Counted from the first letter of the stretch, positions 2,829 through 16,393 are shown. The stretch: DNA of 64,000 nucleotides from Thecamonas trahens ATCC 50062 (GCF_000142905.1 NW_013657634.1:186001-250000); one strand, 5' to 3'. Translations and numbers: made by a program. The notes: a model not told the origin generated them from the letters alone.

Positions 2829-5800
2829 CTACCTTAGAGCAGCCCGAACAGCCTGCCATTCGAGGCGGGCAGCGGCAAGGACGGGATGCGCGCCTGGCCG
2901 CGACGACGGCGCAAAGAGCGCGTCCGCGGTTTTGACGGCTACAGAGAGCCATTGCTTGCACGGCCGATAACGCGACGATACTTTGCGCCACGCCACAATC
3001 ACCCCGAGCGCTTCGGCCACCAGCGACGTGGCGCGCGTGAGGAATGACGGCGCGGCGGCCGCCGCATGTCCGCGCTCACTTCGCAGCAGCATGACCGGGC
3101 GGACCGGGCCACGTCCGCCTGCAGGATCCACGCCCTCGCGCTGCGGCAGCGACGCCAGCGACTCTGCCTCTAGCGCCGCCATGTCGCCCAGGATCTCGTC
3201 GGTCACCGTGGTGTGCAGGACGGCCAGGACCTGGTCCAGCGTCTTGTCGCCGACATCAAACAGCACCCGGCTCACCACCTCGGCTGCCGCTGCGAGCACA
3301 GGTGTGAGGACTGACAGTGTCGGCCCGCTCAGCGTCTTGATCATTGCCTTGACCACCGCCAGCGTCGCCGGCAGGACGCGGACATAGAGCGAGGCGCACG
3401 GCCGATGCCGCGCCCCGGCCAGCAGCGGGCCTACTACCCGCGCCGCACATGACGCCACAAACCCAGGTGCTGTCCGCGGATTGGCGACAATCACTTCGGC
3501 CATCCATAGTTGCAGCCGTCGCATCCGCGACGTCGACACGTTCCGCCCGCTCCAGTGCCTGCCCACTACAAAGTCGACTAGCGCGTTGTTGAACGTGTCC
3601 AGCTCGGACCCGCCTCTCGCACTCGCCGCAGCCACGGCCGGGAGCAAGTAGCTGTCGGCCTGGGCCGCCGCCCGTTCTGACGGCAGCACATCAAACTGCC
3701 GCGCCGTCCACTCGTGCAGCGCTCGGCTCGCATGCGCCGCGCCAGCGCCAATCAGCTTGCCAATCCCACCCATCACCGCCGCCATCAGCTTGCCACGCCC
3801 GCTCGAGATCTCGAGTCCAGAGCCCACAATGACAAACCGGTGGAGGAGGACGTACAACGGGGTCTTGTGCCACAACTCACCGTCCGCAAGCGCCAGTGGC
3901 GCTTGCTCCGCCAGCATCGCCATCACCTCCAGCGCAAAACCCTCGTACGCCCGAGCCACGGGCCCGGGTGTCGTCCCGCGGCTGCAGAGCTCGCTCAACG
4001 CCCGCGCGCAAACATCGGGCACCATCGCGAGGCACTCACCCGGCGAGCTGGCTCCCGCCACTACGCTGCTCACCACGGCCTTCACAAGCTGCAGCCGCGG
4101 CAATGTCCACGCAGCAGGCTCGGCCTGCCATGGCAGGACCACCGTCGCGGGATCGATGGCCACGACAGCGTCCTCGTCTGCATGCTCCAGCTCACCGGCG
4201 CCGGCAAAGGAGAACTTGGCCCAGAGCTCAGCAGCCTTTGCACGGCCGCCCATCAACGCTGCGGTCGATGGCAGTGACGCGAGCGTGTGAAACAGCCGCG
4301 GCAAGTCGACCGCAAACGGATCGACAGCCGCAAGAAGCAGCGCGTGTATGAGTTCCGTCGCTATCGGGCTGACCAGTGAAGCAGGCGTCCGTGCCCCGTG
4401 GTGGAGGAACGCGGTCCAGAACCCTACCGGGACAAGTCGCGCCAGCGCGTCGCCATCTCGGACCAGCCAAGGTGACTGGGTGCCAAGAGAACTCACGACC
4501 GCACTCACCGCCGACCGCCCGTCGCGGGACACGGCTTCTGAGAGCACGCCCATCAGACGGGTCACCGCCCGTAGCGCCGCCGTTGCCACCAGAAACGACT
4601 GCACCGAGTGAACGTGCGCCACCGTCGACTTGGCGCACAACTCTGCATACACTGCCATGAGCAGATCGCGCGCGGAGATCCGCAGCAGGGTCACCTCCGC
4701 CTGGTCCAGCAGCGCCGTCGCAGTCGACGCTGACTCTTGCTCTGCCACGTGCGCGTTGACCAGTGCATCAACATCATCAAAGTCCCCCATGTCAAACGAG
4801 AGTGACGCCGACGCCGACGCCGACGACATCTGTGACTCGGGAAACAAATCCTGGCTCTCATTGTCCGCCGGACACTGGCTGCCCGCTTCGACCTCGCTAC
4901 CGCCGCCATCACGCCCAACATCATGCGAGGCCGGCGGTCGCGGGAGCGGCGGCGGCACAAGACTCACCATGTGAATGAGGAACGTGATGGCCGGAACCCA
5001 AAGGTCCGCCGGCGCCGACGGCGCGAGCAAGCCGACAATATGCGGCGACATGAGCAGGTGCTCTCCAAGGAGCGTGACTGGATCACGGCGCGCCGCGGTG
5101 TCGATCAGACTCGCAGCTGCCTGCAAGTAGCCCGTGACTATTGGAACTGGCGCTCCAGCGCCAATCACTGCCTCCAACCGGTCGGCAATGGCAGGCATGA
5201 CCGGCTCGAGCCGCATGCCCCGGCTCTGCAGCACCCGTCCAAAAACAACCAGCGCTGAGAGCGCGAGCCCGTGCGCCGAGTTGGATGCCGATGCCGGCGA
5301 GATGAGCGCCGAGACTCGCGAAAGGATCGAGTTGACCGTCTCGCACGGCACCGCCGATGCCAGCACCACAGCCAGCGACAGCTGAGCCGCCGCCATCGCC
5401 TGGTCCAGACCGGTCGCCAGCTCGAGGTTGGCATCGAGCCCGACAATGATCGTCGATGCAAGGCGTTTGGCGTCCCACTCGGAGAGCTCGTGCCGCGGGT
5501 GGGTGTCTGCTGCAAACGGCGACGACAGCGCGCACGCCATCAGATGGAGGAGTCGTCCGATAGGCGCCTCGCGCGCCTCGCCCGCAATCGACAACCCGCT
5601 ACCGGCCACGCACACCGAAAGCGTCGGCGGGCCGAGGGTGAGCCACGCCGAGCTCGGTGCAGCCCGAAAGGCCTCCCACACCGAGGTGAGAAAGTCTGAC
5701 GGCGGCGGGTCCCACTTCCCCACCGGCGCCACCAGCGCTTCGACCCACGCCAGCATCTCGTCAAGCGCGCGCGGCCCGAGCGAGTCCAACCGGTTCGCGA

Positions 5801-7388
5801 TGTGCGGAACAAGCAGCCGCCACGGATGCACCAGCTTTGGCAGCAGAGGCTGGATCCACCCAAGCAGCTCGAGCGACGACAGCAGCGGCCCGCTATGAGG
5901 GCCGGTCACCGCATCAAGCGGCGCTGGCGACGCTGCAAACGCCGCTGCTGCAAGCCCGGACAGCGGATGCTGGAGAATCGGCATGCCCGACGGCAGCGCC
6001 GCACGAAGCGGGACAAGAATCGCCGGTAGTGCAGTGTCCATCACAAACGTCACGTCGCCCGCCAGTGTCTCAATCGCGGTGCCCCACACCAATATGGCCG
6101 CAACGTGCGGGAGCGAGACAGGCGTTGGCCAGTGGACAGGCAGCGGCACCGTGTCAAGCAGATGCTGGACTGCCGCCAGCCGCGACGGCACCGGCAGCCG
6201 CCCGAGAGCCGCACCGAGCGACGGCAACACCACATCGCGAAGGTGTAGCACAAGCCCAATTTGGACCGCGCGCGATGACGGCGGCGAGCTATGGAAGAGC
6301 GCAACTACGTCAGCCCGCGCAAGCTGGCGGAGCACTGCAAGCGGCGCCCGCAGTGGCGCCGCTAGCAACGTAGCCGGCACTGGCCGCCACGGCCGGAACG
6401 GGTCCGCACCCGAGATCGAGAGTGCGGCTGGGAGAACCGCAGCCACCAATGGTGCGGGAGCTGGGTGACTGGTTTTGCGCCGCTTCTCGCCGCCATTTGG
6501 TGACCGACGAGACTTGCGCTTGCGCCTCCGCCCAGCTCCCAGCGGCGACGAGTCCGCTTCGGATGAGCGTAGCAAGTTGCGCTGTTGCCCGCGAGAGGGC
6601 TCGGGAGATGACGAGAGTATGACAAGCCGACGGGGCGGAGTGATGCGTCGAGGAGGCGACGACAGTGTCGGCGAAGGACGCGAGAGCGTGGTCACAGCTC
6701 CTACCCCCGATTCCGAGTCGGAGCCCGACGACGACGTCGAGATTGTCAAGCCCGAGATCCGCTCCGGCGGCGGCGAGACATGCAAGGGCGACGCAGTGCG
6801 GCGCTGGGGTGCAGGCGCATGTGACATGTCCATGGCGACGACATCAGTTGCCGCCGCCTTGGTGCTCGCCGCTCGCGGCGATCGCTTACCCGAGCCAGGA
6901 GGCAGAGTTTGCTCCAGCACATGCGGAAGCGACGCCGGAACCGGAATGAGGTCCAGCTCGCTCGAGACATCGACGCGCTTGACGAGTGCAGAAGGTGCGC
7001 TCGCGGTCCGCCTCAGCAGCGACTCGTCCTCGGCAGAGCCGGACGACGACTGCTCGCCGCCGATCTGCGATGAGCCAAAGCCGGGACGCCGCCGCAGCAG
7101 CGCAACCGCAGCCAACTGCTGGCGCTTCGGCAGCTGCGAGAGTAGCTCGTGGCACTGCTGCTTCGCCGAGGCTCCGTGCGTGGGCGACGCCGACGACGAG
7201 CAGGCTTCGCCACCGGCACCCGAGTCCGAGACCGGCGACGCCGCAGCAACCGCAAAGACGACCTCGTGCGGCCGCGGTGCGGTCTTGTGAGCGAACCTTG
7301 CGACTGTAGCAGACGTAGTCCCATCCCCCGACGATGATGAAGCAGAATAAGAGGCCGGTACAAAGCCATGCGCCACTGCAGTCGCCAT
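2829..7388 (-). CDS. 1519-aa protein with low-complexity S/P-rich N-terminus, basic NLS-like patch and helical body; possible MMS22L/Mus7 family
   Basis: Long single-exon ORF with basic patch RRRKRKSRR...KRRK. The C-terminal half has segments recalling fungal Mus7/MMS22 in the expected order (ESQD...GDFDDVD; SPWL...ARLVPVGFW; RLQLVKAVVS; YEGFALEVMAML). The CDS is confident; the family call is tentative. Confidence 0.5.
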   Translation of the reverse strand: MATAVAHGFVPASYSASSSSGDGTTSATVARFAHKTAPRPHEVVFAVAAASPVSDSGAGGEACSSSASPTHGASAKQQCHELLSQLPKRQQLAAVALLRRRPGFGSSQIGGEQSSSGSAEDESLLRRTASAPSALVKRVDVSSELDLIPVPASLPHVLEQTLPPGSGKRSPRAASTKAAATDVVAMDMSHAPAPQRRTASPLHVSPPPERISGLTISTSSSGSDSESGVGAVTTLSRPSPTLSSPPRRITPPRRLVILSSSPEPSRGQQRNLLRSSEADSSPLGAGRRRKRKSRRSPNGGEKRRKTSHPAPAPLVAAVLPAALSISGADPFRPWRPVPATLLAAPLRAPLAVLRQLARADVVALFHSSPPSSRAVQIGLVLHLRDVVLPSLGAALGRLPVPSRLAAVQHLLDTVPLPVHWPTPVSLPHVAAILVWGTAIETLAGDVTFVMDTALPAILVPLRAALPSGMPILQHPLSGLAAAAFAASPAPLDAVTGPHSGPLLSSLELLGWIQPLLPKLVHPWRLLVPHIANRLDSLGPRALDEMLAWVEALVAPVGKWDPPPSDFLTSVWEAFRAAPSSAWLTLGPPTLSVCVAGSGLSIAGEAREAPIGRLLHLMACALSSPFAADTHPRHELSEWDAKRLASTIIVGLDANLELATGLDQAMAAAQLSLAVVLASAVPCETVNSILSRVSALISPASASNSAHGLALSALVVFGRVLQSRGMRLEPVMPAIADRLEAVIGAGAPVPIVTGYLQAAASLIDTAARRDPVTLLGEHLLMSPHIVGLLAPSAPADLWVPAITFLIHMVSLVPPPLPRPPASHDVGRDGGGSEVEAGSQCPADNESQDLFPESQMSSASASASLSFDMGDFDDVDALVNAHVAEQESASTATALLDQAEVTLLRISARDLLMAVYAELCAKSTVAHVHSVQSFLVATAALRAVTRLMGVLSEAVSRDGRSAVSAVVSSLGTQSPWLVRDGDALARLVPVGFWTAFLHHGARTPASLVSPIATELIHALLLAAVDPFAVDLPRLFHTLASLPSTAALMGGRAKAAELWAKFSFAGAGELEHADEDAVVAIDPATVVLPWQAEPAAWTLPRLQLVKAVVSSVVAGASSPGECLAMVPDVCARALSELCSRGTTPGPVARAYEGFALEVMAMLAEQAPLALADGELWHKTPLYVLLHRFVIVGSGLEISSGRGKLMAAVMGGIGKLIGAGAAHASRALHEWTARQFDVLPSERAAAQADSYLLPAVAAASARGGSELDTFNNALVDFVVGRHWSGRNVSTSRMRRLQLWMAEVIVANPRTAPGFVASCAARVVGPLLAGARHRPCASLYVRVLPATLAVVKAMIKTLSGPTLSVLTPVLAAAAEVVSRVLFDVGDKTLDQVLAVLHTTVTDEILGDMAALEAESLASLPQREGVDPAGGRGPVRPVMLLRSERGHAAAAAPSFLTRATSLVAEALGVIVAWRKVSSRYRPCKQWLSVAVKTADALFAPSSRPGAHPVLAAARLEWQAVRAALR

Positions 7389-7633
7389 GGCAGCGTGGCG
7401 TGGTCGGTGTCGGTGGCTCGAGACTCACGAATCTACGACCCTTTTGGGCCACCGAGCGGGGGGGGGGGGTGGGGGTGGAGGCAGGGAGTGGAGGGAGCGC
7501 CAGTGGAACGACAGGGATGGGTCGTGGTGCTCTGCGTCGCGCGCGCAGAGTGTACACACCGGTGCTCGCGGGTGGTGTACGACGAGAGTCGGGGTCGAGT
7601 GTAGGCCGGCGCCCAGCGTGCGGTGGCAACATG

Positions 7634-10600
7634 TTATTGAGCGTCAAAGAAGGCGGCAATGGCGAGCTGGACGTTGAAGCGTGAGGCGGCAAGGAGGTCA
7701 GCGGCCTGGGCGGCATCGACGCCGGTGACTTCCATTACCAAGTCCACGTCGTGGCCCACGATCTCGGCGGCAGCCTGCTCGGGTGCAATGGCCACAAAGC
7801 CCTCCGAGTCGGATGATGACGAGTCACGGCGCCATCGCTGACGAGCGATGAAAGGCTCCCGGGGCGCGTCCATCGCGTCCATCAACGCCTGAAGGTCGGC
7901 CTGGATAGCGAGAATGTCCTCGACGCCGTTGATTGGGTCCGGAACGTGAACCGGCGGCGGAACAGACGACCCAGCCGGCGGGTGGCACGACGGACAACGG
8001 TCGTCACCGGGACAGAGCGCGCACGGCGCCCCGGGCCGACACACCGGGCACGCCACGCAGTCGCACCGCTCATCACAGAACAGGCCGTGGTCTTCGCGGC
8101 CGCACGGGTGCGGCTGTAGACACACGATGCAAAACGAGTAGCCGCAGCATGCGCCGGCCGAGCCGCCAACATGGTGGCACGAGTGCCCGCGCGGCCGCGA
8201 GATGAGCGCGCCGCACCGCGGGCAAGGCTTTGACGTCGCGCCCAGCAGCGCGAGCGTCGCTGCGTCTCGGCCGGTCGCCTCGTCGGCAGCAATCGAGTCG
8301 CACGAGCGCCCGGCATGCCGGAACCATGGCACCGAGCAGTTGCAACACCAATCGGTGGCACACCCCGGACACACTACTCTGCTCGACCGCTGAAGCTGGC
8401 GCTGCGACTTGCCGGAGAGATCCGGCTTGATGCACATCAGCTCGCATCCGGGACAGAACGTAGTCTCACCCTTGGGAACCGCGCCGAGCAGCGACTGGAC
8501 CACCCACCGCGAGCCGGTCTCGGCATCAACCACTCCCCGAGCCACAAGATGCTCGATGACGTGGGCCGGCACGCGCGCCCGCGGGGACATCGAGTCTTGG
8601 GCTCGGCAACCCGGGCACATTGCTGGAAACTGCCCACGCTCGATCATGTCGCGTACCGCACTCTGCGCGCAGCCGGCGCAGTATCCGTGCTCACAAAAGC
8701 CAACGGTAAACGCTACGCTGACGTTGTCACCAAAGCAAATGCCGCACTCGGGCAGCGTCCGCACCCCACAACCAGACGCACCTGACTCGCCCGAGTCGTC
8801 CGAGCTCACAGAGCCGGCCAGCTGGATCGAGCCCACGCCTGCGCCCACCAACAGCGGCGGAGGTAGCTCTCGAGCGAGCCGCGGTCGTGATGGGTCGACA
8901 TCCAGCGCACCGTATCCGCGCACCGGTACGACGTCGACTCGGACCTTGGGAATCAACCGCTGTTTCTCCTCAGCCGCCAGTAGCGCCGCCGCACGTGCGT
9001 GCTCACCAGCACGCAGACGCCGGACGAGCAGCCGCCACACGCCGGGCCAGCCAAACGCCATCAGCGCCACGAGCGCGAAAAGCCCAGCAGTACAGCTCGC
9101 AACAATGCGCGGCGTGGCATCATCGCCCGCCACACACACACCACGCTTGCACCTACTGCCAAACCCGCAGCCGGTGCGCTCGCCAAAGCAACTTGTCGCA
9201 CACTTGCGCGTCCGGGTATCACACACATAGCTACCGCAGCCGGCGTCAAACGGCATCGGCCCACAACTCTTGCCGTCGACCGAGAGCGACGACGGAAGTT
9301 CCACAAATGACTTGTCGACTCTCACGTCCATTACCAGCGGGATCGTCACAAAGGCGAGGACAAGGCCTGCAACGCCAAACGACAACGCGCCCGCGAGCAC
9401 CACCGCCGATCGTCGCATCCCGTACAAATTGCTATGTCGCCAAGAGCACCGCGCGCAGAGGCAGAACCCTACCATGAAGGCCACAAGCAACCCGAGCCCG
9501 ATGGCTGTCAAACTCGCGGCTGTCACCCCAAACGACAGCGGCGCCGACGCAGGTGCGAGCACACATCTCCCTTCGTGGGAACAGTACGGCGCAACGTGCA
9601 TGCCGGATGGGAGCTGTGAAGTGAGCCGCTTGTCCATGGCGCCGCGGCACTCATGCGACGATGAGCATGAAATCGCACACGTCCTGTTGTGAACGCGGCA
9701 GTAGTATGGCCAGCAGTTCGGCGAGGAGAGGCCGACACAGCTTGTGAGTGCAACCGGCAGCGTTGTTTCCGGTGGCCGTGTCAGCCGCACCCGAAGACGT
9801 ACGAGCGAGAGTGGAAGTGCCACAATGAGGCCGGCGCCAACAGCCACCAGAGCGACGACCGCAAACAACTGCACCACGTCGTTGGAAGATGCCCAGGGCA
9901 CAAGCACCCCCGGCAAGCACGCACACACCACCATGACCGCCGTCACCACCCCAAGCACCACCACCGCCGCCAGCCATCGCCGGAGCACGAGCCGGCTGGC
10001 GTGATGGGTTGTAGCAACACACTTGCCGGACGCGGCATCGCACGCCAGCCCCGCCCCGGCGCACTCAAAGTCGTGCCGGCACGAGCGCCGGCACCGCCCA
10101 CTCGGCATGTCGCACCAGTACGGTGCACAGACCGGCGCGTCAACGGCGGCACAGGCAGGCGAACTCGCGCGCTCCGCAGCCGTCAGTGGCGGCTCGAGCG
10201 CAGGCACCGGCACTCGGAGAACGAGCATGGCGATGCCGACGACAGCAAAGCCGACAATGGCACCACATGTCGCAGACGCGAGCCACGAGTTACAGAGCCA
10301 GATCGGCCGCCATCGCCGCCGCCACCGCGATCGATACGAGTAAGGCGAGCAGCACTTGTTGCTACACCACCCGGCACCCACGCCTAAGACCACCACTAGC
10401 AACCCGAGGCCAATTGCCGCGGAGAGCGAGCTCACCCAAAACACGAGAGGCGAGTACCGCCGGACAGAGAGGCCGGCGCCGCCAGTCCAAACGCAAACAC
10501 CGGCGGCCGAGCAGCCATAGCCGGTCACACACTGATCTGAGGAAGAGCAGCGGGTCCGGCATGCGCGGCTCCCATAGTCGCACGTGTACGGATAGCAGGC

Positions 10601-11581
10601 GTGCGGGCCAGCGCAAGACGTCCCGTTGCCTGCAATGCCATCAAAGTTCACAGTCACAAGGTGGCTGGCCATGTTCAGCCCGACCGAGAGCGCAAAAATG
10701 AACGCCAGAACCACACTCACCATCGATGACATGACGCAGATGACCGGGCGTAGGTGGACCGGAAACAAAAACGAAGCGACCGAGAAGCAGCAAGGCGTGC
10801 CGATAAGAAAGGTGCCAAGCGCGACTGCCAGCGCCACGCCCCACAGTGTCGCCTGCGAGTGGGCTGGCTTGTGAATGCCTGGTACCGATCGGGCCCATGT
10901 TGCAATGACGCAAGTCCCACCACGACAAGCAGCGCCAGGCGAGCACTGAGAGCTTGCAGTGCAGCGTGTACCACAGAGTCCGGCGCGGGTGTTGCAGAGG
11001 AACGGCTCGCAAACCGGATCATCGAGCGCCCCGCACGGTCGACGGTCGCCGGCGCTAGCAGGCGAGACCGCCGGCAGGCTCGACGCCCGCGAGCTGAGCC
11101 CGATCGAGCAGCCGATGACAACGGCAGATATCGGGACGGCTACAACACCGACCAGCACTGCTGCCCAAAAGTTGTCCGATGTGCCGATTCGCGAGGCCAT
11201 GAGCCGCGGCGAGCCCCACCTTACCGGGCGGGCGGTGGTGTGGCGGGCAGCCGAGGCCGGCGGGACCGCGCCAGCTGCTGCAGCGACGCCGCACACCACA
11301 ATGGCGAAGCCAATGGGCACAAAGACCACCATCAGCGCCAGCGGTGTCCGCGCCATTAGTGGCTGCGGCGACGGGATGCCCGGAAGGAGCGACGCGCACG
11401 TGCTAGACGCCTCGAGGCACGTTGAATGCGGCGGACAGGCGGGGGGAGAGTGGCACCCTCTGGCGACGGCAATGAACGGGGCGGGCTGAGCAGCACCTGT
11501 AGCAGCGCATGGATCCGCGGAGACATACACCACAGAGAGAACAACGAGTGCCTTCAGTATGGCATCTCTCATCATCCCCAT
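7634..11581 (-). CDS. Polytopic membrane RBR (RING1-IBR-RING2) E3 ubiquitin ligase with five extracellular Cys-rich repeats and a C-terminal UBA-like domain
   Basis: Likely start at ATG 11581/11575/11572 (signal peptide MRDAILKALVVLSVVYVSA). About 11 hydrophobic helices. RING1 CGIC..CEHGYCAGC..CPGC; IBR CPGC..CPGCATDWCCNCSVPW..H..C; RING2 KPCPRC..GHSCHH..CCGYSFCIVC; UBA-like VDLVMEVTGVDAAQAADLLAASRFNVQLAIAAFFD. Confidence 0.85.
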   Translation of the reverse strand: MGMMRDAILKALVVLSVVYVSADPCAATGAAQPAPFIAVARGCHSPPACPPHSTCLEASSTCASLLPGIPSPQPLMARTPLALMVVFVPIGFAIVVCGVAAAAGAVPPASAARHTTARPVRWGSPRLMASRIGTSDNFWAAVLVGVVAVPISAVVIGCSIGLSSRASSLPAVSPASAGDRRPCGALDDPVCEPFLCNTRAGLCGTRCTASSQCSPGAACRGGTCVIATWARSVPGIHKPAHSQATLWGVALAVALGTFLIGTPCCFSVASFLFPVHLRPVICVMSSMVSVVLAFIFALSVGLNMASHLVTVNFDGIAGNGTSCAGPHACYPYTCDYGSRACRTRCSSSDQCVTGYGCSAAGVCVWTGGAGLSVRRYSPLVFWVSSLSAAIGLGLLVVVLGVGAGWCSNKCCSPYSYRSRWRRRWRPIWLCNSWLASATCGAIVGFAVVGIAMLVLRVPVPALEPPLTAAERASSPACAAVDAPVCAPYWCDMPSGRCRRSCRHDFECAGAGLACDAASGKCVATTHHASRLVLRRWLAAVVVLGVVTAVMVVCACLPGVLVPWASSNDVVQLFAVVALVAVGAGLIVALPLSLVRLRVRLTRPPETTLPVALTSCVGLSSPNCWPYYCRVHNRTCAISCSSSHECRGAMDKRLTSQLPSGMHVAPYCSHEGRCVLAPASAPLSFGVTAASLTAIGLGLLVAFMVGFCLCARCSWRHSNLYGMRRSAVVLAGALSFGVAGLVLAFVTIPLVMDVRVDKSFVELPSSLSVDGKSCGPMPFDAGCGSYVCDTRTRKCATSCFGERTGCGFGSRCKRGVCVAGDDATPRIVASCTAGLFALVALMAFGWPGVWRLLVRRLRAGEHARAAALLAAEEKQRLIPKVRVDVVPVRGYGALDVDPSRPRLARELPPPLLVGAGVGSIQLAGSVSSDDSGESGASGCGVRTLPECGICFGDNVSVAFTVGFCEHGYCAGCAQSAVRDMIERGQFPAMCPGCRAQDSMSPRARVPAHVIEHLVARGVVDAETGSRWVVQSLLGAVPKGETTFCPGCELMCIKPDLSGKSQRQLQRSSRVVCPGCATDWCCNCSVPWFRHAGRSCDSIAADEATGRDAATLALLGATSKPCPRCGALISRPRGHSCHHVGGSAGACCGYSFCIVCLQPHPCGREDHGLFCDERCDCVACPVCRPGAPCALCPGDDRCPSCHPPAGSSVPPPVHVPDPINGVEDILAIQADLQALMDAMDAPREPFIARQRWRRDSSSSDSEGFVAIAPEQAAAEIVGHDVDLVMEVTGVDAAQAADLLAASRFNVQLAIAAFFDAQ

Positions 11582-11892
11582 GCGCCCGCCAAGGCCGATA
11601 GAAGCCGTGCGCGCGAGTCCTGGTCGCCGAGCGAGGTGTGTCACACACGAGCGTGTCATGGAACACTCGTTCTTGCATGGCGTGGTCGTCGATTGACTTT
11701 CCGTCGGCCGGTGGACAGCGGCCTCCGGCCACCACTCGGCAGACGGCAAGCGCCCCCCTCGCCGACTCCATCCCACCCAGCGGGGTTACGCGTCGAGTAC
11801 ACGAGGCACGCAGGCGCTGGCGAGCGAGCGCATTGGTCACCACCCCACCTCCCAAAGTACTCACCTCCCCTTCACCCTCGTATACATACAAC

Positions 11893-12645
11893 ATGCTGCG
11901 TGGGCTGCAGTCTTGGAGCATGCTGACGCGGACGCGGGGCTTTGCGGCGGCGGCCGGAGCGGCCGGCTCGCTGACCGAGCTCGAGCAGGCTGCGCTCTAC
12001 CGCAAGATGGCGGTAGCGGTGGTGACGGGCGGGCGGAGCGAGCTGGAGACGCTGGTCAAGGGCGCCATGGCGGACGACGTGCCGCTCAGGGGCCCGCTGG
12101 CCGAGGCGGCGCTCAAGGCCGCCATGTTTGTCCCGCAGGGCACCCTGCTCGAGGCCGAGGCCGACCTCGACCTCGTCCAGCACGGCGCCCACCACGCCAT
12201 CCGGCCCAAGCCGCGGGCCAAGCGGCAGAGGGCTCTGTTTGGGACGGTCAAGTCGGCGGTCGCCTCGGTGCTGGAGGGCCTCGATCGTGGGTATGTCAAG
12301 CGCCTGAACCTGGTAGGCGTAGGCTATCGCGCCTGGCTCGGCAAGCCGTCCGAGGGCAAGGCCCTTGTCGACGACGGCTCGGTCCGGGCCCCGGTTGCAG
12401 CGCCCGACGACGATGTCCTCTGGCTCAAGCTCGGGTACTCGCATGATGTCGAGGTGCCCATTCCCGACGGACTCGCTGTCAAGGTCATCAAGGACACCAC
12501 CATTGTTGTCGAGGGCATCCACAAGCAGCAGGTCGGCGAGTTTGCCGCCCAACTCCGCCGCCATCGCAAGCCCGATGCGTACAAGGGCAAGGGCGTCCGC
12601 TACGACGGCGAGGTTCTCACCCTTAAGCAGGGCAAGCGCAATTGA
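11893..12645 (+). CDS. MRPL6: Mitochondrial ribosomal protein uL6m
   Basis: Presequence-like MLRGLQSWSMLTRTRGF; uL6 motifs LNLVGVGYRA, LKLGYSH, GIHKQQVGEFAAQLRRHRKPDAYKGKGVRY. Confidence 0.93.
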   Translation: MLRGLQSWSMLTRTRGFAAAAGAAGSLTELEQAALYRKMAVAVVTGGRSELETLVKGAMADDVPLRGPLAEAALKAAMFVPQGTLLEAEADLDLVQHGAHHAIRPKPRAKRQRALFGTVKSAVASVLEGLDRGYVKRLNLVGVGYRAWLGKPSEGKALVDDGSVRAPVAAPDDDVLWLKLGYSHDVEVPIPDGLAVKVIKDTTIVVEGIHKQQVGEFAAQLRRHRKPDAYKGKGVRYDGEVLTLKQGKRN

Positions 12646-12722: not shown

Positions 12723-15435
12723 CTACGATGCGGTCGTCTTTACCTTGCCGAGGCTCGGAAGGCCCTCCATGACCCGGCGGAACATTCGCTTGCCATTGAC
12801 GAGGTTTGTGACCCGGAGTCGCTCGTTCGCGAGATGGCCATTATCCGACGCCTGGCCCATCGGGATGTGCAGCGCTGGCGCACCCAGCGTCTCCTCGAGG
12901 TACGGCACGACCGGAATGGAGCCGCCTTCGCGGACAAAGAGCGGCGGAGCGCCCCAGACCTCCTCCACCGCTTCTGCTGCGAGGCCGTAGAGCGGCGACT
13001 CGGCATCCGCCGACCACCACTTTCCGGCCTGTACCACCTTGACGGCCACACTGTTGGTCGAGTTCAACTCGCCAAAGACCGCGTCGACGTGGGCCTGCAG
13101 CCGCGCAATCATAGTGTCGATGCTCTGGTCCGGCACAATCCGCATCGAGACCTTGGCCGTCGCCCGTCGCGGAATGACCGACGACGCGCCCGAACCGGTA
13201 AACGAGCCCTGGACGTCGTGGACCGAGAGCGACGGCAGGAGCCACCGCCGCTGGAGCACAGACTCGGTGTTGGCGTCGCGGTCCCCGGGCGCCACGCCAA
13301 TCTCGTCCAGGTAGCGGTCGAGGTCAAAGTCGTGGACGTTGAGGTCAAGCGCGGTCTCGGTCACGTCGACGTAAAAGCCGGGTACCGCCACTCGTGTGTT
13401 GCCGTCCTCAAACAAGCCGTCCAGGACGTGGACAAGGTCGACCAGCGGCTCGCGGACCGCTCCGCCGTCGACGCCCGAGTGCAGATCGCGCGGCGGGCCA
13501 GTGACGGTCAGCGCAACGTGGATGACCCCGCGCATGCCGAGGGTGAGGCACGGCGCCTGGTCGCCAACCCAGTACGTGTTTGAGAGGAGGACGTAGTCGA
13601 CGCCACCCAGGAGCTCGCTGTTGGCCTCGATTGCCTCGCGGAGACCGGCCGAGCCTGACTCCTCTTCGCCCTCGACCACAAAGACGACGTTGATTGGCAG
13701 TGAGCCGCACTTGGCGTGAGCCACCAGCTCGCCCACAGCCGCGAGAAAGGCCACAATGGGCCCCTTGTCGTCTGACGCTCCGCGCCCGTACAGATACCCG
13801 TCGCGCGGGGTGAGCGTCCACGGGTCGCTCTCCCACCCGTTGTCGGGCGATGCCGGCTGCACGTCGTAGTGTCCGTAAAAGGCGAGCGTCGGCTTGGACG
13901 GGTCGGCCCCGATCCGCCCCAGCACAATCGGATTTCGTCGCGGCGAGGTCGGGTTTGGCACAATGCGGACGTCCGCTCCGAGTGCAAGCAGCGCGTCTGA
14001 CATGTGCCGCGCCGCCGCTAGGCATGCCGATGCACGTGCTGGGGAGCCCGAGACCGATGCGTGGGCCACAAACTCGCCAAGCATCGCAATGAGCGCCTCG
14101 GTCGTGACAACCTCGCTTGCGCCGAGCTGGTCGAGCAGCGGCGCACATGAGCTGGCGGCGGGGCTCTCGACCAGCGATACCGCCCCAGTATGTCGCACGA
14201 GGTCATACACGGCACATCGTGCGTTGGCAGCGCCGATCCACAACGTCGAGCCGAGCATGAGTCCATAGAGTGGTTCGTGCGGGACGTGGACAAGTCGCAG
14301 ACAGGCGAGCGAGCCGAGGCTCCAAACGCAAACATCTCCGCCACTTCCGATCGAGACCAGGTTGTCGGCGCACTTGGCGAACGCCACCACTGCCGACGAG
14401 TGCCGCGAGAGGACCCGGAGGCAAAACGGCGGACCAGGAAATGTCAGATCCCAGACCCGAATAGTGGTGTCAGATGCGCCTGAAAAGAGCCGACGGCCAG
14501 GTTCAAGCACCATGGCCAGCACCGATGACGCATGGCCCTCGAGCAGTGCTTCGCGATGCTGCAGCGCCGGCGACGTCCAGACCGAGATGGAACCTGTGGC
14601 AGTACCCGAGTACAGCCTCGCAGCGCCTGCATCGTACGCCATGCATAGTACGCTCCCGCGGTGCATCGAGTTGGCGGTGGCATGAACTGGCCGCTCACAC
14701 GGAGTGCACACAGATGCAGAGCAAGTTGCACTCTCACTGGCCGCGGCGGCGTACGGTGAAGGTGCCGGAGGCGGGTGGAGCCGCAACGGCTGGCGAATGA
14801 GTGGAATCGGATTGTCTGCCGCCGCCACTGCATCCATTGACACCGGGATGGGGCTCTCTTCGCTCAACGCAGCCAGGAGATCGTCAAGGACAAGTGAGCG
14901 GATGAATCCATCGTGCATGCCGACGTAGAGGAGGCCGGCGTCCGGGGCGACGGCGAGTGAGATGACGCTCCCGGATCGCGAGTTAAAGAGCCCCAAGCAG
15001 GCATGCGGAGGCGAAGCTTGCCACACACGAATGTATGTGTCGGCCGAGCCACTCAGCAGCAGATCCGAGTCTTGGAGAAAGAGCAGCGAAGTGACGGCGC
15101 GGACGTGGCCCGTCAGCGTGACAGCCAGCTGATACGAGCTTGTGTCAAAGATGCGGATGTCGCCGTTTGAGAGACCAGCGGCGACAGCAGCTTTGTCGGC
15201 AAGCTCGGCGAGTACCATACATGTTGTATGTTGCGGGAGGGTAAAGCCGGCGAGTGGGTCGAGTGGATCGACGACGGCGGCGCCGCTCACTCCGAGACCC
15301 ACCGGCGAGCCGAGCAGAGCGGGCGGGAAGGCAAAGGAGCCGGCGGCAGCAGAGAGTGGCGAGGTCGGTGGAGTGGCATCGATCCAGTTGTGCGACTCGG
15401 AAAAGATGCGGGTGGAGCCGGAGCGGGAAGGACCC
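12723..15435 (-). CDS. DUG2: DUG2-like WD40 + M20 peptidase-like region; probably the C-terminal part of a DUG3-DUG2 fusion
   Basis: WD40 repeats (GH..LLSGSADTYIRVW; LFSGASDTTIRVWD). M20 motifs YGHYDVQP, LYGRGASDDKGP, EGEEESGS. DUG2-type variants SNTYW, DLHSGVDGG, DNGHLANER. No convincing ATG of its own before the first WD repeat. Confidence 0.85.
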
Positions 15436-16393
15436 TGTGCGTGGGGACGGCCGTCGCGTCGAGCATCGGCAGGCACCAGACGTCGATCTGCGAGGTGACG
15501 ACCATGGCTGTGTTCTGCGGAACTGCCAGCCAGTCGTCCGAGTCCCACAGCGGCTCCGAGGCAATGACAACCAGCGACGGCGTCTTGTTCTCGGTCACCA
15601 TGGTGCAGTCGGTGAGCGCATCACCGGGCTTGGCGTCTGGCGCAGGGACAGAGGCAATGCGCGAACCAGTGGCAAAGTAGAGCGAGACCGACGGGTCCGA
15701 GTCAGACATGACCCCGTTGCGCGAGACATAGCGAGTGGCGACCGAGGTTGTTCCGTCCGAGATGGCGATGTTGAGGTAAGAGACAAAGTCTACGCCACGG
15801 TCTGCGGCAGCCTCGGCCTCCCATGCATTCAGCTGGGCCACCGTCTCGTAGAGGGCGGCAAGTAAGTCGGCCGGGACCAGATCGAGGTGATCAAAGTCTG
15901 TGCCCTGCGGAAAGGTGTTGAGGAAGAGGGCAAAGATGTGCTCCGAGTCTGTGGATCCGAGGATGCCGCCGTAGATATCGTCCCTGAGCGAAGCAAGCAG
16001 CTTGCGCTTGACACCTGCGGAAAATGCACCCACGGATCCGTTGTGCATGAAGAGGAGCTTGCCAGCGGCAAACGGATGGCAGTTGGCCTCGGAGAGCGAG
16101 CCCGTGGTTGCCGAGCGGACATGGGTCATGAACATGCGCGATCGGGTGGCCTTGGCGAGGCGATGCAAGTTGGCGTTGTTGTGGGCCGGTGACATGGAGG
16201 TGAACACACACGGCAACTGGTCATCTTCGTGGAGCGAGTACCATCCGAGCCCACAGCCATCGAGATGGACGGCAAAGCCCGTGACCAGCTGGGCCGACCA
16301 CAGCGTCTGCCGACAGAGCGAGTGCCGTGGCTGGGTCACCACCTCGGCCACTGTCAACGGGTCCACGCCCACATATAGCAGGAACCGGCACAT
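15287..16393 (-). CDS. DUG3: DUG3-like class II (Ntn) glutamine amidotransferase
   Basis: N-terminal MCR (Cys nucleophile), DGCGLGWY, PAHNNANL, HVRSAT, NCHPF, FMHNG, GSTDSEHIFALF, VIASEPL. Homology ends near 15470, and the remaining tail overlaps the DUG2 frame. Confidence 0.9.
   Translation of the reverse strand: MCRFLLYVGVDPLTVAEVVTQPRHSLCRQTLWSAQLVTGFAVHLDGCGLGWYSLHEDDQLPCVFTSMSPAHNNANLHRLAKATRSRMFMTHVRSATTGSLSEANCHPFAAGKLLFMHNGSVGAFSAGVKRKLLASLRDDIYGGILGSTDSEHIFALFLNTFPQGTDFDHLDLVPADLLAALYETVAQLNAWEAEAAADRGVDFVSYLNIAISDGTTSVATRYVSRNGVMSDSDPSVSLYFATGSRIASVPAPDAKPGDALTDCTMVTENKTPSLVVIASEPLWDSDDWLAVPQNTAMVVTSQIDVWCLPMLDATAVPTHRVLPAPAPPASFPSRTTGSMPLHRPRHSLLPPAPLPSRPLCSARRWVSE

What the first reader, a model, noticed from the sequence alone, without database searches (positions are those of the whole stretch)
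7634..11581. Receptor-like 11-TM RBR ubiquitin ligase built from repeated [TM hairpin + 8-Cys module] units
Seen: after a signal peptide the protein alternates two TM helices with a Cys module five times, consensus C-x5-8-C-x-P-Y-x-C-x6-C-x3-C-x5-C-x2-G-x2-C-x4-6-C-V (~11035-10910, 10620-10490, 10160-10012, 9745-9560, 9270-9132). One more TM follows, then RING1-IBR-RING2, an extra Cys-rich tail and a UBA-like domain. Counting helices puts all five modules outside and the RBR in the cytosol. Known: characterised membrane RBRs (RNF144, RNF19, RNF217) have one or two anchor helices and no ectodomain. Inference: a sensor-ligase coupling extracellular or luminal binding directly to ubiquitin transfer. 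I do not know of a described family with this architecture.
Basis: partly seen in the sequence, partly recalled or inferred. Interest (0 to 1): 0.85.

Follow-up and report, generated by a model that had tools for sequence, protein, structure and literature searches.

The report
Multipass membrane RBR ubiquitin ligase
A marine flagellate (Thecamonas trahens) has a real, conserved gene for a ubiquitin ligase anchored by eleven membrane helices that display five small bacterial-type cysteine-knot modules on the far side of the membrane, a layout not described for this ligase class, though its function is untested.

Summary
Window 7634-11581 (-) is one uninterrupted 1315-aa ORF of Thecamonas trahens (GenBank AMSG_09394). 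It reads signal peptide, small N-terminal Cys domain, five [two TM helices + 8-Cys module] units, an eleventh TM helix, RING1-IBR-RING2, a Cys-rich tail and a UBA-like domain.

- **Gene model:** the GenBank model (1063 aa) starts late and removes three in-frame pieces as introns. These pieces encode module halves and TM helices. They are conserved in a 1333-aa environmental orthologue (35% identity end to end), so the deposited model is wrong.
- **Family:** T. trahens has five paralogues of this design. A Tara Oceans metagenome and one other public run hold three full-length orthologues.
- **Ligase residues:** all RBR zinc ligands and the catalytic Cys-His-His are invariant.
- **Module:** no Pfam family reaches threshold. 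The same 8-Cys signature is abundant in bacterial lipoproteins and MYXO-CTERM proteins.
- **Topology:** helix parity, K+R bias and sequons place all modules opposite the RBR.

No polytopic RBR with ecto-modules turned up in papers or databases. The sensor function is inference only. The scan had already flagged four likely paralogues of this design on other DNA of this genome, one with a follow-up report (s1-758368).

The parts
7634..11581 (-). Complete coding sequence, 1315 aa plus stop, no intron
   Evidence: ORF list and translation. 100% identical to parts of AMSG_09394. Aligns end to end with environmental orthologue P0006.
11516..11581 (-). Signal-peptide-like N-terminus (aa 1-22, ...VYVSA/DP)
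   Evidence: Hydropathy. The equivalent hydrophobic N-terminus is present in P0006. No dedicated signal-peptide predictor was available.
11396..11509 (-). Small N-terminal Cys domain (aa 25-62, five Cys)
   Evidence: Sequence. Conserved in P0006 and in the paralogues, e.g. CTSD..C.....C in the C19 and C50 copies.
11102..11347 (-). TM1 (aa 79-101), Arg-rich loop, TM2 (aa 138-160)
   Evidence: Hydropathy; loop charge analysis.
10910..11035 (-). 8-Cys module 1 (aa 183-224)
   Evidence: Alignment A1. AlphaFold2 model of this module has pLDDT 95.5.
10682..10849 (-). TM3-TM4 hairpin (aa 245-300)
   Evidence: Hydropathy.
10493..10615 (-). 8-Cys module 2 (aa 323-363), preceded by the sequon NGT
10208..10444 (-). 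TM5 (aa 380-402), Cys- and Arg-rich loop (NKCCSPYSYRSRWRRRWRP), TM6 (aa 436-458)
10019..10153 (-). 8-Cys module 3 (aa 477-521)
9812..9985 (-). TM7-TM8 hairpin (aa 533-590)
9563..9739 (-). 8-Cys module 4 (aa 615-673), with a 17-residue insert that the orthologue also has
9338..9520 (-). TM9-TM10 hairpin (aa 688-748)
9134..9265 (-). 8-Cys module 5 (aa 773-816)
9038..9106 (-). TM11 (aa 826-848), followed by RLLVRRLRAGEHAR
8606..8746 (-). RING1, C3HC4 (C946, C949, C963, H965, C968, C971, C989, C992)
   Evidence: Ligands invariant in five paralogues. The family profile aligns to RING1 of ARIH1 and ARIH2.
8300..8455 (-). IBR (aa 1043-1094)
   Evidence: Pfam IBR E 3.8e-4, 20.9 bits, below the 24.3 cut-off for this copy. 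Above the cut-off in orthologue P0006, E 3.7e-8. Ligands invariant.
8087..8224 (-). RING2/Rcat (aa 1120-1165). Catalytic Cys1135 (window 8177-8179) lies in the invariant motif C-H-H.
   Evidence: Aligns with RING2 of parkin, ARIH1 and ARIH2, with C1135 on their active-site Cys. Invariant in the paralogues.
7985..8077 (-). Extra Cys-rich tail (aa 1169-1199, FCDxRCDCxxCPxCRPGxPCxxCPGxxxCPxC)
   Evidence: Seven invariant Cys in five paralogues. Also present in a soluble RBR on contig C15. No family match.
7637..7756 (-). C-terminal UBA-like domain (aa 1276-1315)
   Evidence: Pfam UBA_4 E 4.5e-7, 30 bits against a cut-off of 21.8. The profile matches the p47 UBA domain, E 8.5e-5.
10879..10971 (-). 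Piece 1 removed as an intron in the GenBank model (93 nt, GT..AG, in frame); encodes the second half of module 1
   Evidence: An RNA-library contig, 10764-10914, runs across its acceptor.
10362..10583 (-). Piece 2 removed as an intron in the GenBank model (222 nt, in frame); encodes most of module 2 and TM5
   Evidence: An RNA-library contig, 10281-10431, runs across its acceptor.
9367..9582 (-). Piece 3 removed as an intron in the GenBank model (216 nt, in frame); encodes the end of module 4, TM9 and part of TM10
   Evidence: Only low depth inside it in run X1, and nothing bridges its ends.

Best explanation
This is one intron-less gene for a polytopic membrane RBR-type ubiquitin ligase. It belongs to a small family restricted, as far as can be seen, to Thecamonas and a marine relative.

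Shown: a signal-like N-terminus and eleven helices thread the chain. The small N-terminal Cys domain and all five 8-Cys modules lie on one face of the membrane. The RING1-IBR-RING2 unit, its Cys tail and the UBA-like domain lie on the other face.

Inferred from the family's chemistry:
- The modules are disulfide-bonded knots exposed to the ER lumen and then the cell exterior or an endomembrane lumen. The RBR is cytosolic.
- The RBR takes ubiquitin from an E2 bound at RING1 onto Cys1135, with His1137 assisting, and passes it to lysines of its own tail or of neighbouring membrane proteins.
- The UBA-like domain binds ubiquitin or holds the RBR in check.

Most speculative step: the crown of five individually conserved modules recognises a partner outside the cell (a prey surface, matrix or another membrane protein). 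That would decide where and on what the ligase acts, for example by triggering ubiquitin-dependent internalisation.
For: - **Single gene:** the ORF is uninterrupted. The same layout is found in five T. trahens paralogues and in three full-length environmental orthologues. P0006 is 35% identical to this protein over 1332 aa, P0004 matches the C50 copy and P0005 the C19 copy.
- **The three annotated introns are coding:** all are multiples of 3, have no stop codon, complete modules and helices, and are conserved with their Cys in P0006. RNA-library contigs run through two of the acceptors and no spliced joint was seen.
- **Ligase:** the family profile hits ARIH2 and ARIH1 at 2e-11, parkin at 1e-7, HOIP at 4e-7 and RNF216 at 2e-5, with C1135 on the active-site Cys. 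Every RING1, IBR and RING2 ligand and the C-H-H motif is invariant at 34-41% overall identity.
- **Topology:** in six proteins every module lies in an odd loop and the RBR in an even one. K+R is 14.5% in the short loops against 7.6% in the module loops, and the difference has the same direction in all six. 23 of 25 sequons in the membrane part are in module loops. The module's other relatives are bacterial lipoproteins and MYXO-CTERM proteins, which lie outside the cytoplasm.
- **Modules are selected individually:** module n of this protein is most similar to module n of P0006 for all five, and the module 4 insert is shared.
- **Module fold:** the AlphaFold2 model has pLDDT 95.5.
Against: - No activity, localisation, ligand or transcript end was tested.
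- RING2 departs from the canon. The Zn-ligand Cys that normally follows the catalytic Cys by 5 residues lies at +10/+11 here. The C50 copy and P0006 lack the second Cys of the last C-x2-C. Activity could therefore be altered.
- The Pfam IBR score of this copy is below the gathering cut-off.
- AlphaFold2 on the cytosolic part was poor, mean pLDDT 49.
- Topology rests on hydropathy and charge, not on a trained predictor or an experiment.
- The RNA evidence is a few low-depth contigs from environmental RNA libraries, which may carry DNA. Nothing bridges the third annotated intron.
- The TM helices are poorly conserved, 17-43% between orthologues. That argues for plain anchors and says nothing for signal transmission.
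Confidence: 0.62

Rival explanations
1. Ligand-gated sensor ligase. Binding to the outer modules rearranges the helix bundle and releases an autoinhibited RBR, so that an outside signal is converted directly into ubiquitin transfer.
For: The architecture and topology allow it. From general knowledge of parkin, ARIH1 and HOIP, RBR ligases are generally autoinhibited and switched on by binding events. The five modules are conserved position by position. A UBA-like domain is available as a regulatory element.
Against: Nothing here tests gating. The TM helices carry no conserved polar positions and are the least conserved parts, 17-43% identity. A ~90-residue, poorly conserved linker (26% identity) separates TM11 from RING1, which is a weak lever for allostery. 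Environmental relatives carry hairpins and modules without any RBR (P0015), so the membrane part has a use of its own.
Confidence: 0.2
2. Pseudo-ligase. The protein is mainly a surface adhesion or structural protein, and its RBR has become a ubiquitin- or E2-binding scaffold without catalysis.
For: RING2 ligand spacing is irregular and differs between paralogues. Two family members lack one Cys of the last pair. The Pfam IBR score is sub-threshold for this copy.
Against: The catalytic Cys and both following His are invariant. So are the RING1 and IBR ligands and the RING2 ligands up to the final C-x2-C pair, whose second Cys two family members lack. This holds in five paralogues at 34-41% identity, and the catalytic motif also holds in the orthologue. 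RING2 is the best-conserved region between orthologues, at 62%.
Confidence: 0.1
3. Annotation-type artefact. The deposited spliced 1063-aa model is right, or the locus is two genes (a membrane protein and a soluble RBR).
For: All three annotated introns have GT..AG ends. The C12 paralogue is annotated as a separate membrane protein, AMSG_03164, with its RBR part in another frame.
Against: The spliced-out pieces are in frame and have no stop codon. They restore the repeat pattern and are conserved in P0006. The spliced model would cut modules in half and change helix parity. There is no stop between TM11 and RING1 in the three copies read in one frame or in the three orthologues. RNA-library contigs cross two acceptors unspliced.
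Confidence: 0.04

Closest known systems
Ariadne-type RBR ligases (ARIH1/HHARI, ARIH2)
   Same: Best sequence match over RING1-IBR-RING2 (profile E 2e-11). Active-site Cys followed by His at +2. A UBA-like domain is present in the protein.
   Different: No Ariadne domain was found. The UBA-like domain is C-terminal and of the p47/UBA_4 type. There is an extra Cys-rich tail after RING2. Eleven N-terminal TM helices carry ecto-modules, whereas ARIH proteins are soluble.
Human membrane RBRs RNF144A/B, RNF19A/B and RNF217
   Same: RBR ligases with hydrophobic membrane-anchoring regions (PMC4021871).
   Different: From my own knowledge, not tested here: those have one or two helices C-terminal to the RBR and no structured ectodomain. 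Here eleven helices precede the RBR and carry five disulfide-type modules. No direct sequence comparison could be made, because they did not appear among the PDB hits and the named-protein searches were saturated.
PA-TM-RING receptor-like ligases (RNF43, ZNRF3, RNF13, Goliath)
   Same: Works like: an extracellular or luminal binding domain and a cytosolic ubiquitin-ligase domain in one chain (family named in PMC4021871). This is the nearest functional analogy.
   Different: Those are single-pass, carry a PA domain and a plain RING that does not form a thioester. They are not homologous to this protein in the membrane or ecto part.
Unnamed Cys-rich repeat of bacterial lipoproteins and MYXO-CTERM proteins
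   Same: Same eight-Cys spacing and the C-x-P-Y-x-C-D core. The unit profile finds 534 proteins at E <= 1e-3, and most of the best 150 look like bacterial lipobox or MYXO-CTERM proteins with tandem copies.
   Different: In bacteria the modules stand head to tail in soluble or lipid-anchored proteins. Here each module is separated from the next by a TM hairpin and the chain ends in a eukaryotic ligase. The direction and fact of any gene transfer were not tested.
Dickkopf N-terminal domain, DUF7107, EB module and knottins
   Same: Weak resemblance of the second half of the module (C-x5-C-x5-C-x4-C hairpin). Foldseek's top rows are the Dkk4 N-terminal region and squash trypsin-inhibitor knottins.
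   Different: All Pfam matches are below the gathering score, best E 0.0046. No Foldseek match has E <= 0.001 and no VIA-align match has Z >= 2.

Membership tests
RBR (RING-between-RING) E3 ligases | RING1 with a C3HC4 ligand set | tested here: met
   C946, C949, C963, H965, C968, C971, C989 and C992 are invariant in five paralogues and align to RING1 of ARIH1/2.
RBR (RING-between-RING) E3 ligases | IBR domain (C6HC) between the two RINGs | tested here: met
   Ligands are present and invariant. Pfam IBR scores 20.9 bits in this copy, below the 24.3 cut-off, but 33.8 bits in orthologue P0006. The profile aligns through the IBR of ARIH2.
RBR (RING-between-RING) E3 ligases | RING2/Rcat with an active-site Cys and a nearby His | tested here: met
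   C1135-H-H1137 aligns on the active-site Cys of parkin and ARIH2 and is invariant. The spacing of the following Zn ligands is non-canonical.
RBR (RING-between-RING) E3 ligases | Forms a ubiquitin thioester and transfers ubiquitin | not testable with these tools
   Needs a biochemical assay.
Ariadne subfamily | C-terminal Ariadne (autoinhibitory) domain | tested here: not met
   No Pfam match beyond IBR and UBA at E <= 1. The region after RING2 is a Cys tail, a low-complexity linker and a UBA-like domain.
RNF144/RNF19/RNF217-type membrane RBRs | One or two helices C-terminal to the RBR, no ectodomain | tested here: not met
   All eleven helices are N-terminal to RING1 and none follows RING2. 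PMC4021871 says only that these proteins have hydrophobic regions. The number and position of their helices is from my own knowledge.
UBA_4 (PF14555, UBA-like) | Score above Pfam's gathering cut-off | tested here: met
   30 bits against a cut-off of 21.8, E 4.5e-7. Also met in the C19, C50 and C21 copies and in P0006.
Dickkopf_N, DUF7107, EB and WAP Cys-rich domains | Score above Pfam's gathering cut-off | tested here: not met
   Best result is DUF7107 at E 0.0046, 17.7 bits against 24.6. It matches 9 of 24 modules, all sub-threshold.
Bacterial MYXO-CTERM/lipoprotein Cys-rich repeat (no curated model) | Eight Cys with the same spacing plus the C-x-P-[YF]-x-C-D core | tested here: met
   Profile hits down to E 1.6e-41 on proteins made of tandem copies. 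The motif can be read directly in P0007, P0031, P0055 and P0072. Source names are 'MYXO-CTERM domain-containing protein' and 'TIGR03382 family'.

The most novel reading that the evidence does not exclude
A one-component transmembrane ubiquitin-signalling receptor. Binding of an external ligand, for instance a bacterial prey surface, to the crown of five knot modules would switch on the cytosolic RBR. Recognition outside would then be written directly as ubiquitin inside, for example to drive uptake. The recognition module would share ancestry with a repeat of bacterial surface proteins. It would be the first RBR known to work as a receptor.
Probability: 0.15. Interest if true: 0.85.

Novelty: new variant of a known kind. 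Interest (0 to 1): 0.58.

Why it matters
RBR ligases are studied mainly as soluble, autoinhibited enzymes such as parkin, HOIP and the Ariadnes. The few membrane-bound ones are tail-anchored and have nothing outside the membrane. A conserved family that places an RBR behind an 11-13-helix anchor studded with extracytoplasmic disulfide modules widens the known design space of this enzyme class. It offers a natural system for asking whether an RBR can be controlled across a membrane.

The finding also gives a first eukaryotic context for a widespread, unnamed bacterial surface-protein repeat.

On the practical side, it corrects a public gene model: AMSG_09394 lacks 75 N-terminal residues and three coding pieces. 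The family looks restricted to a little-studied lineage and has no functional data, so the immediate impact is modest.

Tried and rejected
- **The search for homologous proteins** (all three used). Each run was saturated at 8000 word-sharing candidates and returned only the T. trahens proteins themselves. This says nothing about relatives.
- **AlphaFold2 of the cytosolic part** with a five-sequence alignment gave mean pLDDT 49. It was not used for fold search.
- **Fold searches with the module model.** Foldseek against the PDB gave nothing at E <= 0.001. VIA-align wide gave nothing at Z >= 2, because the domain is too small. The 'atlas' structure library was not installed.
- **ESM Atlas by features** returned only generic soluble IBR clusters at scores <= 0.79, below the useful range.
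- **Module profile against PDB sequences** returned only chance-level rows: HSTX-I at 0.19 and uromodulin at 0.41.
- **NCBIfam** has no model for the module.
- **First positive-inside count**, using 15-residue flanks, did not discriminate. Whole-loop densities did.
- **Literature.** Four searches found no description of this family or of any polytopic RBR.
- **Synteny** between the environmental contig and the window was not found.
- **Spliced models.** The C21 and C12 paralogues change frame inside the gene. I used their two frames as separate pieces by reference and did not join them.


Full report
**What is there**

The window is from Thecamonas trahens ATCC 50062. The only database protein found is AMSG_09394, 100% identical over the shared parts. 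On the minus strand an ORF is open from 11776 to 7634, and from the ATG at 11581 it encodes 1315 aa.

Hydropathy and Cys positions give the following layout:
- a signal-like N-terminus (aa 1-22) and a small Cys domain (aa 25-62);
- five units, each of two hydrophobic helices followed by an 8-Cys module (modules at aa 183-224, 323-363, 477-521, 615-673 and 773-816);
- an eleventh helix (aa 826-848) and a ~90-residue linker;
- RING1 (946-992), IBR (1043-1094) and RING2 (1120-1165);
- a further Cys-rich stretch (1169-1199), a low-complexity linker and a UBA-like domain (Pfam UBA_4, E 4.5e-7, above the cut-off).

**The gene model**

The deposited protein has 1063 aa. It starts at Met76 and lacks aa 205-235, 334-407 and 668-739. 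These gaps correspond to GT..AG intervals of 93, 222 and 216 nt at window 10971-10879, 10583-10362 and 9582-9367.

All three intervals are multiples of three and have no stop codon. They encode the second half of module 1, most of module 2 plus TM5, and the end of module 4 plus TM9 and part of TM10.

An environmental protein, P0006 (1333 aa), aligns with the 1315-aa ORF from residue 30 to 1313 at 35% identity. It covers all three pieces with their Cys conserved, and it also covers the N-terminal Cys domain that the deposited model omits.

Contigs from two environmental RNA libraries, 99% or more identical to the window, run unspliced across the acceptors of the first two intervals (10764-10914 and 10281-10431). 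Run X1 has low depth inside the third. No spliced joint was seen. This RNA evidence is thin: single low-depth contigs, DNA carry-over possible, nothing bridging the third interval.

Together with the conservation argument, I take the continuous ORF as the product. An in-frame ATG 78 nt further upstream cannot be excluded as the start, but the orthologue's N-terminus favours 11581.

**A family, not a single case**

Searching the organism's own genome with the membrane part found paralogues on contigs C19, C50, C21 and C12. Their ORFs show the same plan: signal or anchor, small Cys domain, TM hairpins alternating with 8-Cys modules, a last helix, RBR and the same Cys tail. Pfam finds a C-terminal UBA_4 in the C19, C50 and C21 copies but not in the C12 reading frame, which ends just after the Cys tail. 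C19 and C50 each have five modules, and C19 has an extra hairpin pair without a module.

A search with the RBR plus tail gives exactly these five loci at 42-46% identity, plus two remoter RBRs. One of those, on C15, is a soluble protein with the same RING2 and tail.

**Search outside the genome**

A profile of 19 aligned units (A3) was run against 1.84 billion representative proteins. It found 534 proteins at E <= 1e-3.
- Among the best 150 hits, proteins that combine many helices, several modules and an RBR are the T. trahens ones and three environmental ones: P0006, P0004 and P0005.
- P0006 is an orthologue of this gene. P0004 is an orthologue of the C50 copy (38% identity over 1488 aa). P0005 is an orthologue of the C19 copy (33% over 1165 aa).
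- P0006 and P0004 lie on intron-less contigs of 63% G+C from one Tara Oceans protist-fraction metagenome (ERR868368, PRJEB4352).
- A neighbouring gene on the P0006 contig is 60% identical to a T. trahens gene. The source is therefore a related but distinct organism, and the paralogues predate the split between the two.
- Environmental relatives also exist with hairpins and modules but no RBR: P0015, 538 aa, complete in two metagenomes.

**The module**

Twenty-four modules from the five paralogues align with eight invariant Cys and the consensus C-x7-C-x-P-Y-x-C-D-x3-G-x-C-x3-C-x5-C-x2-G-x2-C-x3-G-x-C-V.

No curated family fits. Pfam gives only sub-threshold matches to DUF7107, EB, WAP and Dickkopf_N, and NCBIfam gives nothing.

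AlphaFold2 with the 24-row alignment gives a confident model, pLDDT 95.5. It has no significant structural neighbour. Foldseek's top rows are the Dkk4 N-terminal region and knottins, at E > 0.8, and VIA-align reports nothing.

Most of the remaining best 150 profile hits look like bacterial proteins with lipobox signals, and some are named MYXO-CTERM or TIGR03382-family proteins. They are made of tandem copies of the same eight-Cys signature, including C-x-P-Y-x-C-D. So the module belongs to a large, unnamed family of bacterial surface-protein repeats. Whether the eukaryote acquired it from bacteria was not tested.

**The ligase**

In the alignment of the five cytosolic parts (34-41% identity), all RING1, IBR and RING2 ligands, the motif C1135-H-H and seven Cys of the tail are invariant.

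The family profile hits the following PDB chains:

| Target | E-value |
|---|---|
| ARIH2, ARIH1 | 2-3e-11 |
| parkin RING2 | 1e-7 |
| HOIP | 4e-7 |
| RNF216 | 2e-5 |
| p47 UBA domain | 8.5e-5 |

The alignments put C1135 on the active-site Cys. RING2 is the best-conserved region between this protein and P0006, at 62% identity.

There are deviations. After the catalytic Cys the next Zn ligands lie at variable distances: +10/+11 here, +5/+7 in the C21 copy and +9/+12 in the C19 copy. The C50 copy and P0006 lack the second Cys of the last C-x2-C. No Ariadne domain was found.

**Topology**

In six proteins (three paralogues and their orthologues), counting the signal-like segment as the first helix, every module and the N-terminal Cys domain fall in odd loops. 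The RBR falls in an even one. The extra hairpin pair of the C19 type keeps this parity.

The short non-module loops, together with the 30 residues after the last helix, have 14.5% K+R against 7.6% in the module loops. The difference has the same direction in all six proteins. The Fisher p-value is 3e-9, but it is descriptive only, because the sequences are related.

23 of 25 N-x-S/T sequons of the membrane part lie in module loops, often just before the first Cys. These loops also hold about three quarters of the loop residues, so the excess is modest.

Modules of a family otherwise found in bacterial extracytoplasmic proteins need an oxidising compartment. An RBR needs cytosolic E1, E2 and ubiquitin. 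The one helix between module 5 and RING1 satisfies both. The short loops next to the helices are often rich in Cys (for example NKCCSPY and CLCARC), which may be palmitoylation sites. That is inference only.

**How it probably works**

Established by sequence: this is a membrane-anchored protein with a complete RBR catalytic set, and its modules are on the opposite face.

Inferred from what is known of RBR enzymes: ubiquitin passes from an E2 at RING1 to C1135 and then to lysines of nearby cytosolic segments, either its own tail or neighbouring membrane proteins.

The five modules are conserved position by position between orthologues. The identity matrix is diagonal for 5 of 5 modules, and the module 4 insert is shared. 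This speaks for a specific, composite binding surface and against interchangeable spacers.

The helices are the least conserved parts and show no conserved polar residues.

**Comparison and novelty**

The protein is an RBR ligase by all sequence criteria tested. It is closest to the Ariadne group in sequence but lacks their defining Ariadne domain.

It does not fit the human membrane RBRs RNF144, RNF19 and RNF217. PMC4021871 notes only that these have hydrophobic regions. That their helices lie C-terminal to the RBR is from my own knowledge.

In function it may resemble the PA-TM-RING receptor-like ligases, but it is unrelated to them.

I found no paper on this family, and no ESM Atlas cluster scored high enough to count as a relative.

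The scan had already noted four same-design genes on other pieces of this genome, presumably the four paralogues found here. One had a follow-up that reached the same reading (s1-758368). I saw those notes only after my own analysis.

**Verdict**

The feature is real and conserved. It is a new architectural variant of a known enzyme class, restricted to a small lineage, and its function is unknown.

Noticed in passing
window 7634-11581 (-): The GenBank/UniProt model AMSG_09394 (1063 aa) starts 75 residues late and removes three in-frame coding pieces as introns. The protein should be 1315 aa.
   Followed up: yes
L013 (G000:C21:8000-17999), 3411-5576 and 5231-7756 (+): The C21 paralogue (AMSG_04998) changes reading frame near L013 ~5360-5390, inside a unit. 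The cause is either a short intron or a sequence error. The deposited model (P0002) also starts only at residue 242 of the first frame.
   Followed up: partly
L014 (G000:C12:6000-15999), 3154-5649 and 5504-7705 (+): The C12 paralogue is annotated as a separate 841-aa membrane protein (AMSG_03164), and its RBR part lies in another frame downstream. Its membrane part has about 13 helices, including a long module-free polytopic stretch. No UBA was found in the open frame.
   Followed up: partly
L019 (G000:C15:385000-394999), 5075-7198 (-): A soluble RBR has the same RING2 (GHACHH) and Cys-rich tail as the membrane family. It is preceded by four repeats of an 'HDHPL...YP...W.CD.C'-type zinc-finger-like unit and an extra RING.
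   Followed up: no
L016 (G000:C19:271000-280500), 1584-2090 (+): Upstream of the C19 paralogue's start the open frame runs through about 100 codons of almost pure His and Pro (CAC/CAT-rich simple sequence).
   Followed up: no
L020/L021 (environmental contigs), gene 1776-3392 of L020: P0015 (538 aa) comes from two marine metagenomes. It has TM hairpins and the same 8-Cys modules but ends in a Ser/Gly/Asp-rich tail instead of an RBR. P0023 combines leucine-rich repeats, a TM helix and three modules. The module is therefore reused in several membrane proteins of these organisms.
   Followed up: partly
window 7400-11900: Subsurface and seawater metatranscriptome runs (X1, X2, X4) hold contigs 99% or more identical to this T. 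trahens locus. The species or a very close strain therefore occurs in those samples.
   Followed up: no
window 11638-12645 (+) and 12723-15548 (-): The neighbours are a ribosomal protein L6-type gene transcribed divergently from the ligase gene, and a WD40 + M20 peptidase fusion. The latter is already noted by the scan as DUG2/DUG3-like, s1-747571.
   Followed up: no
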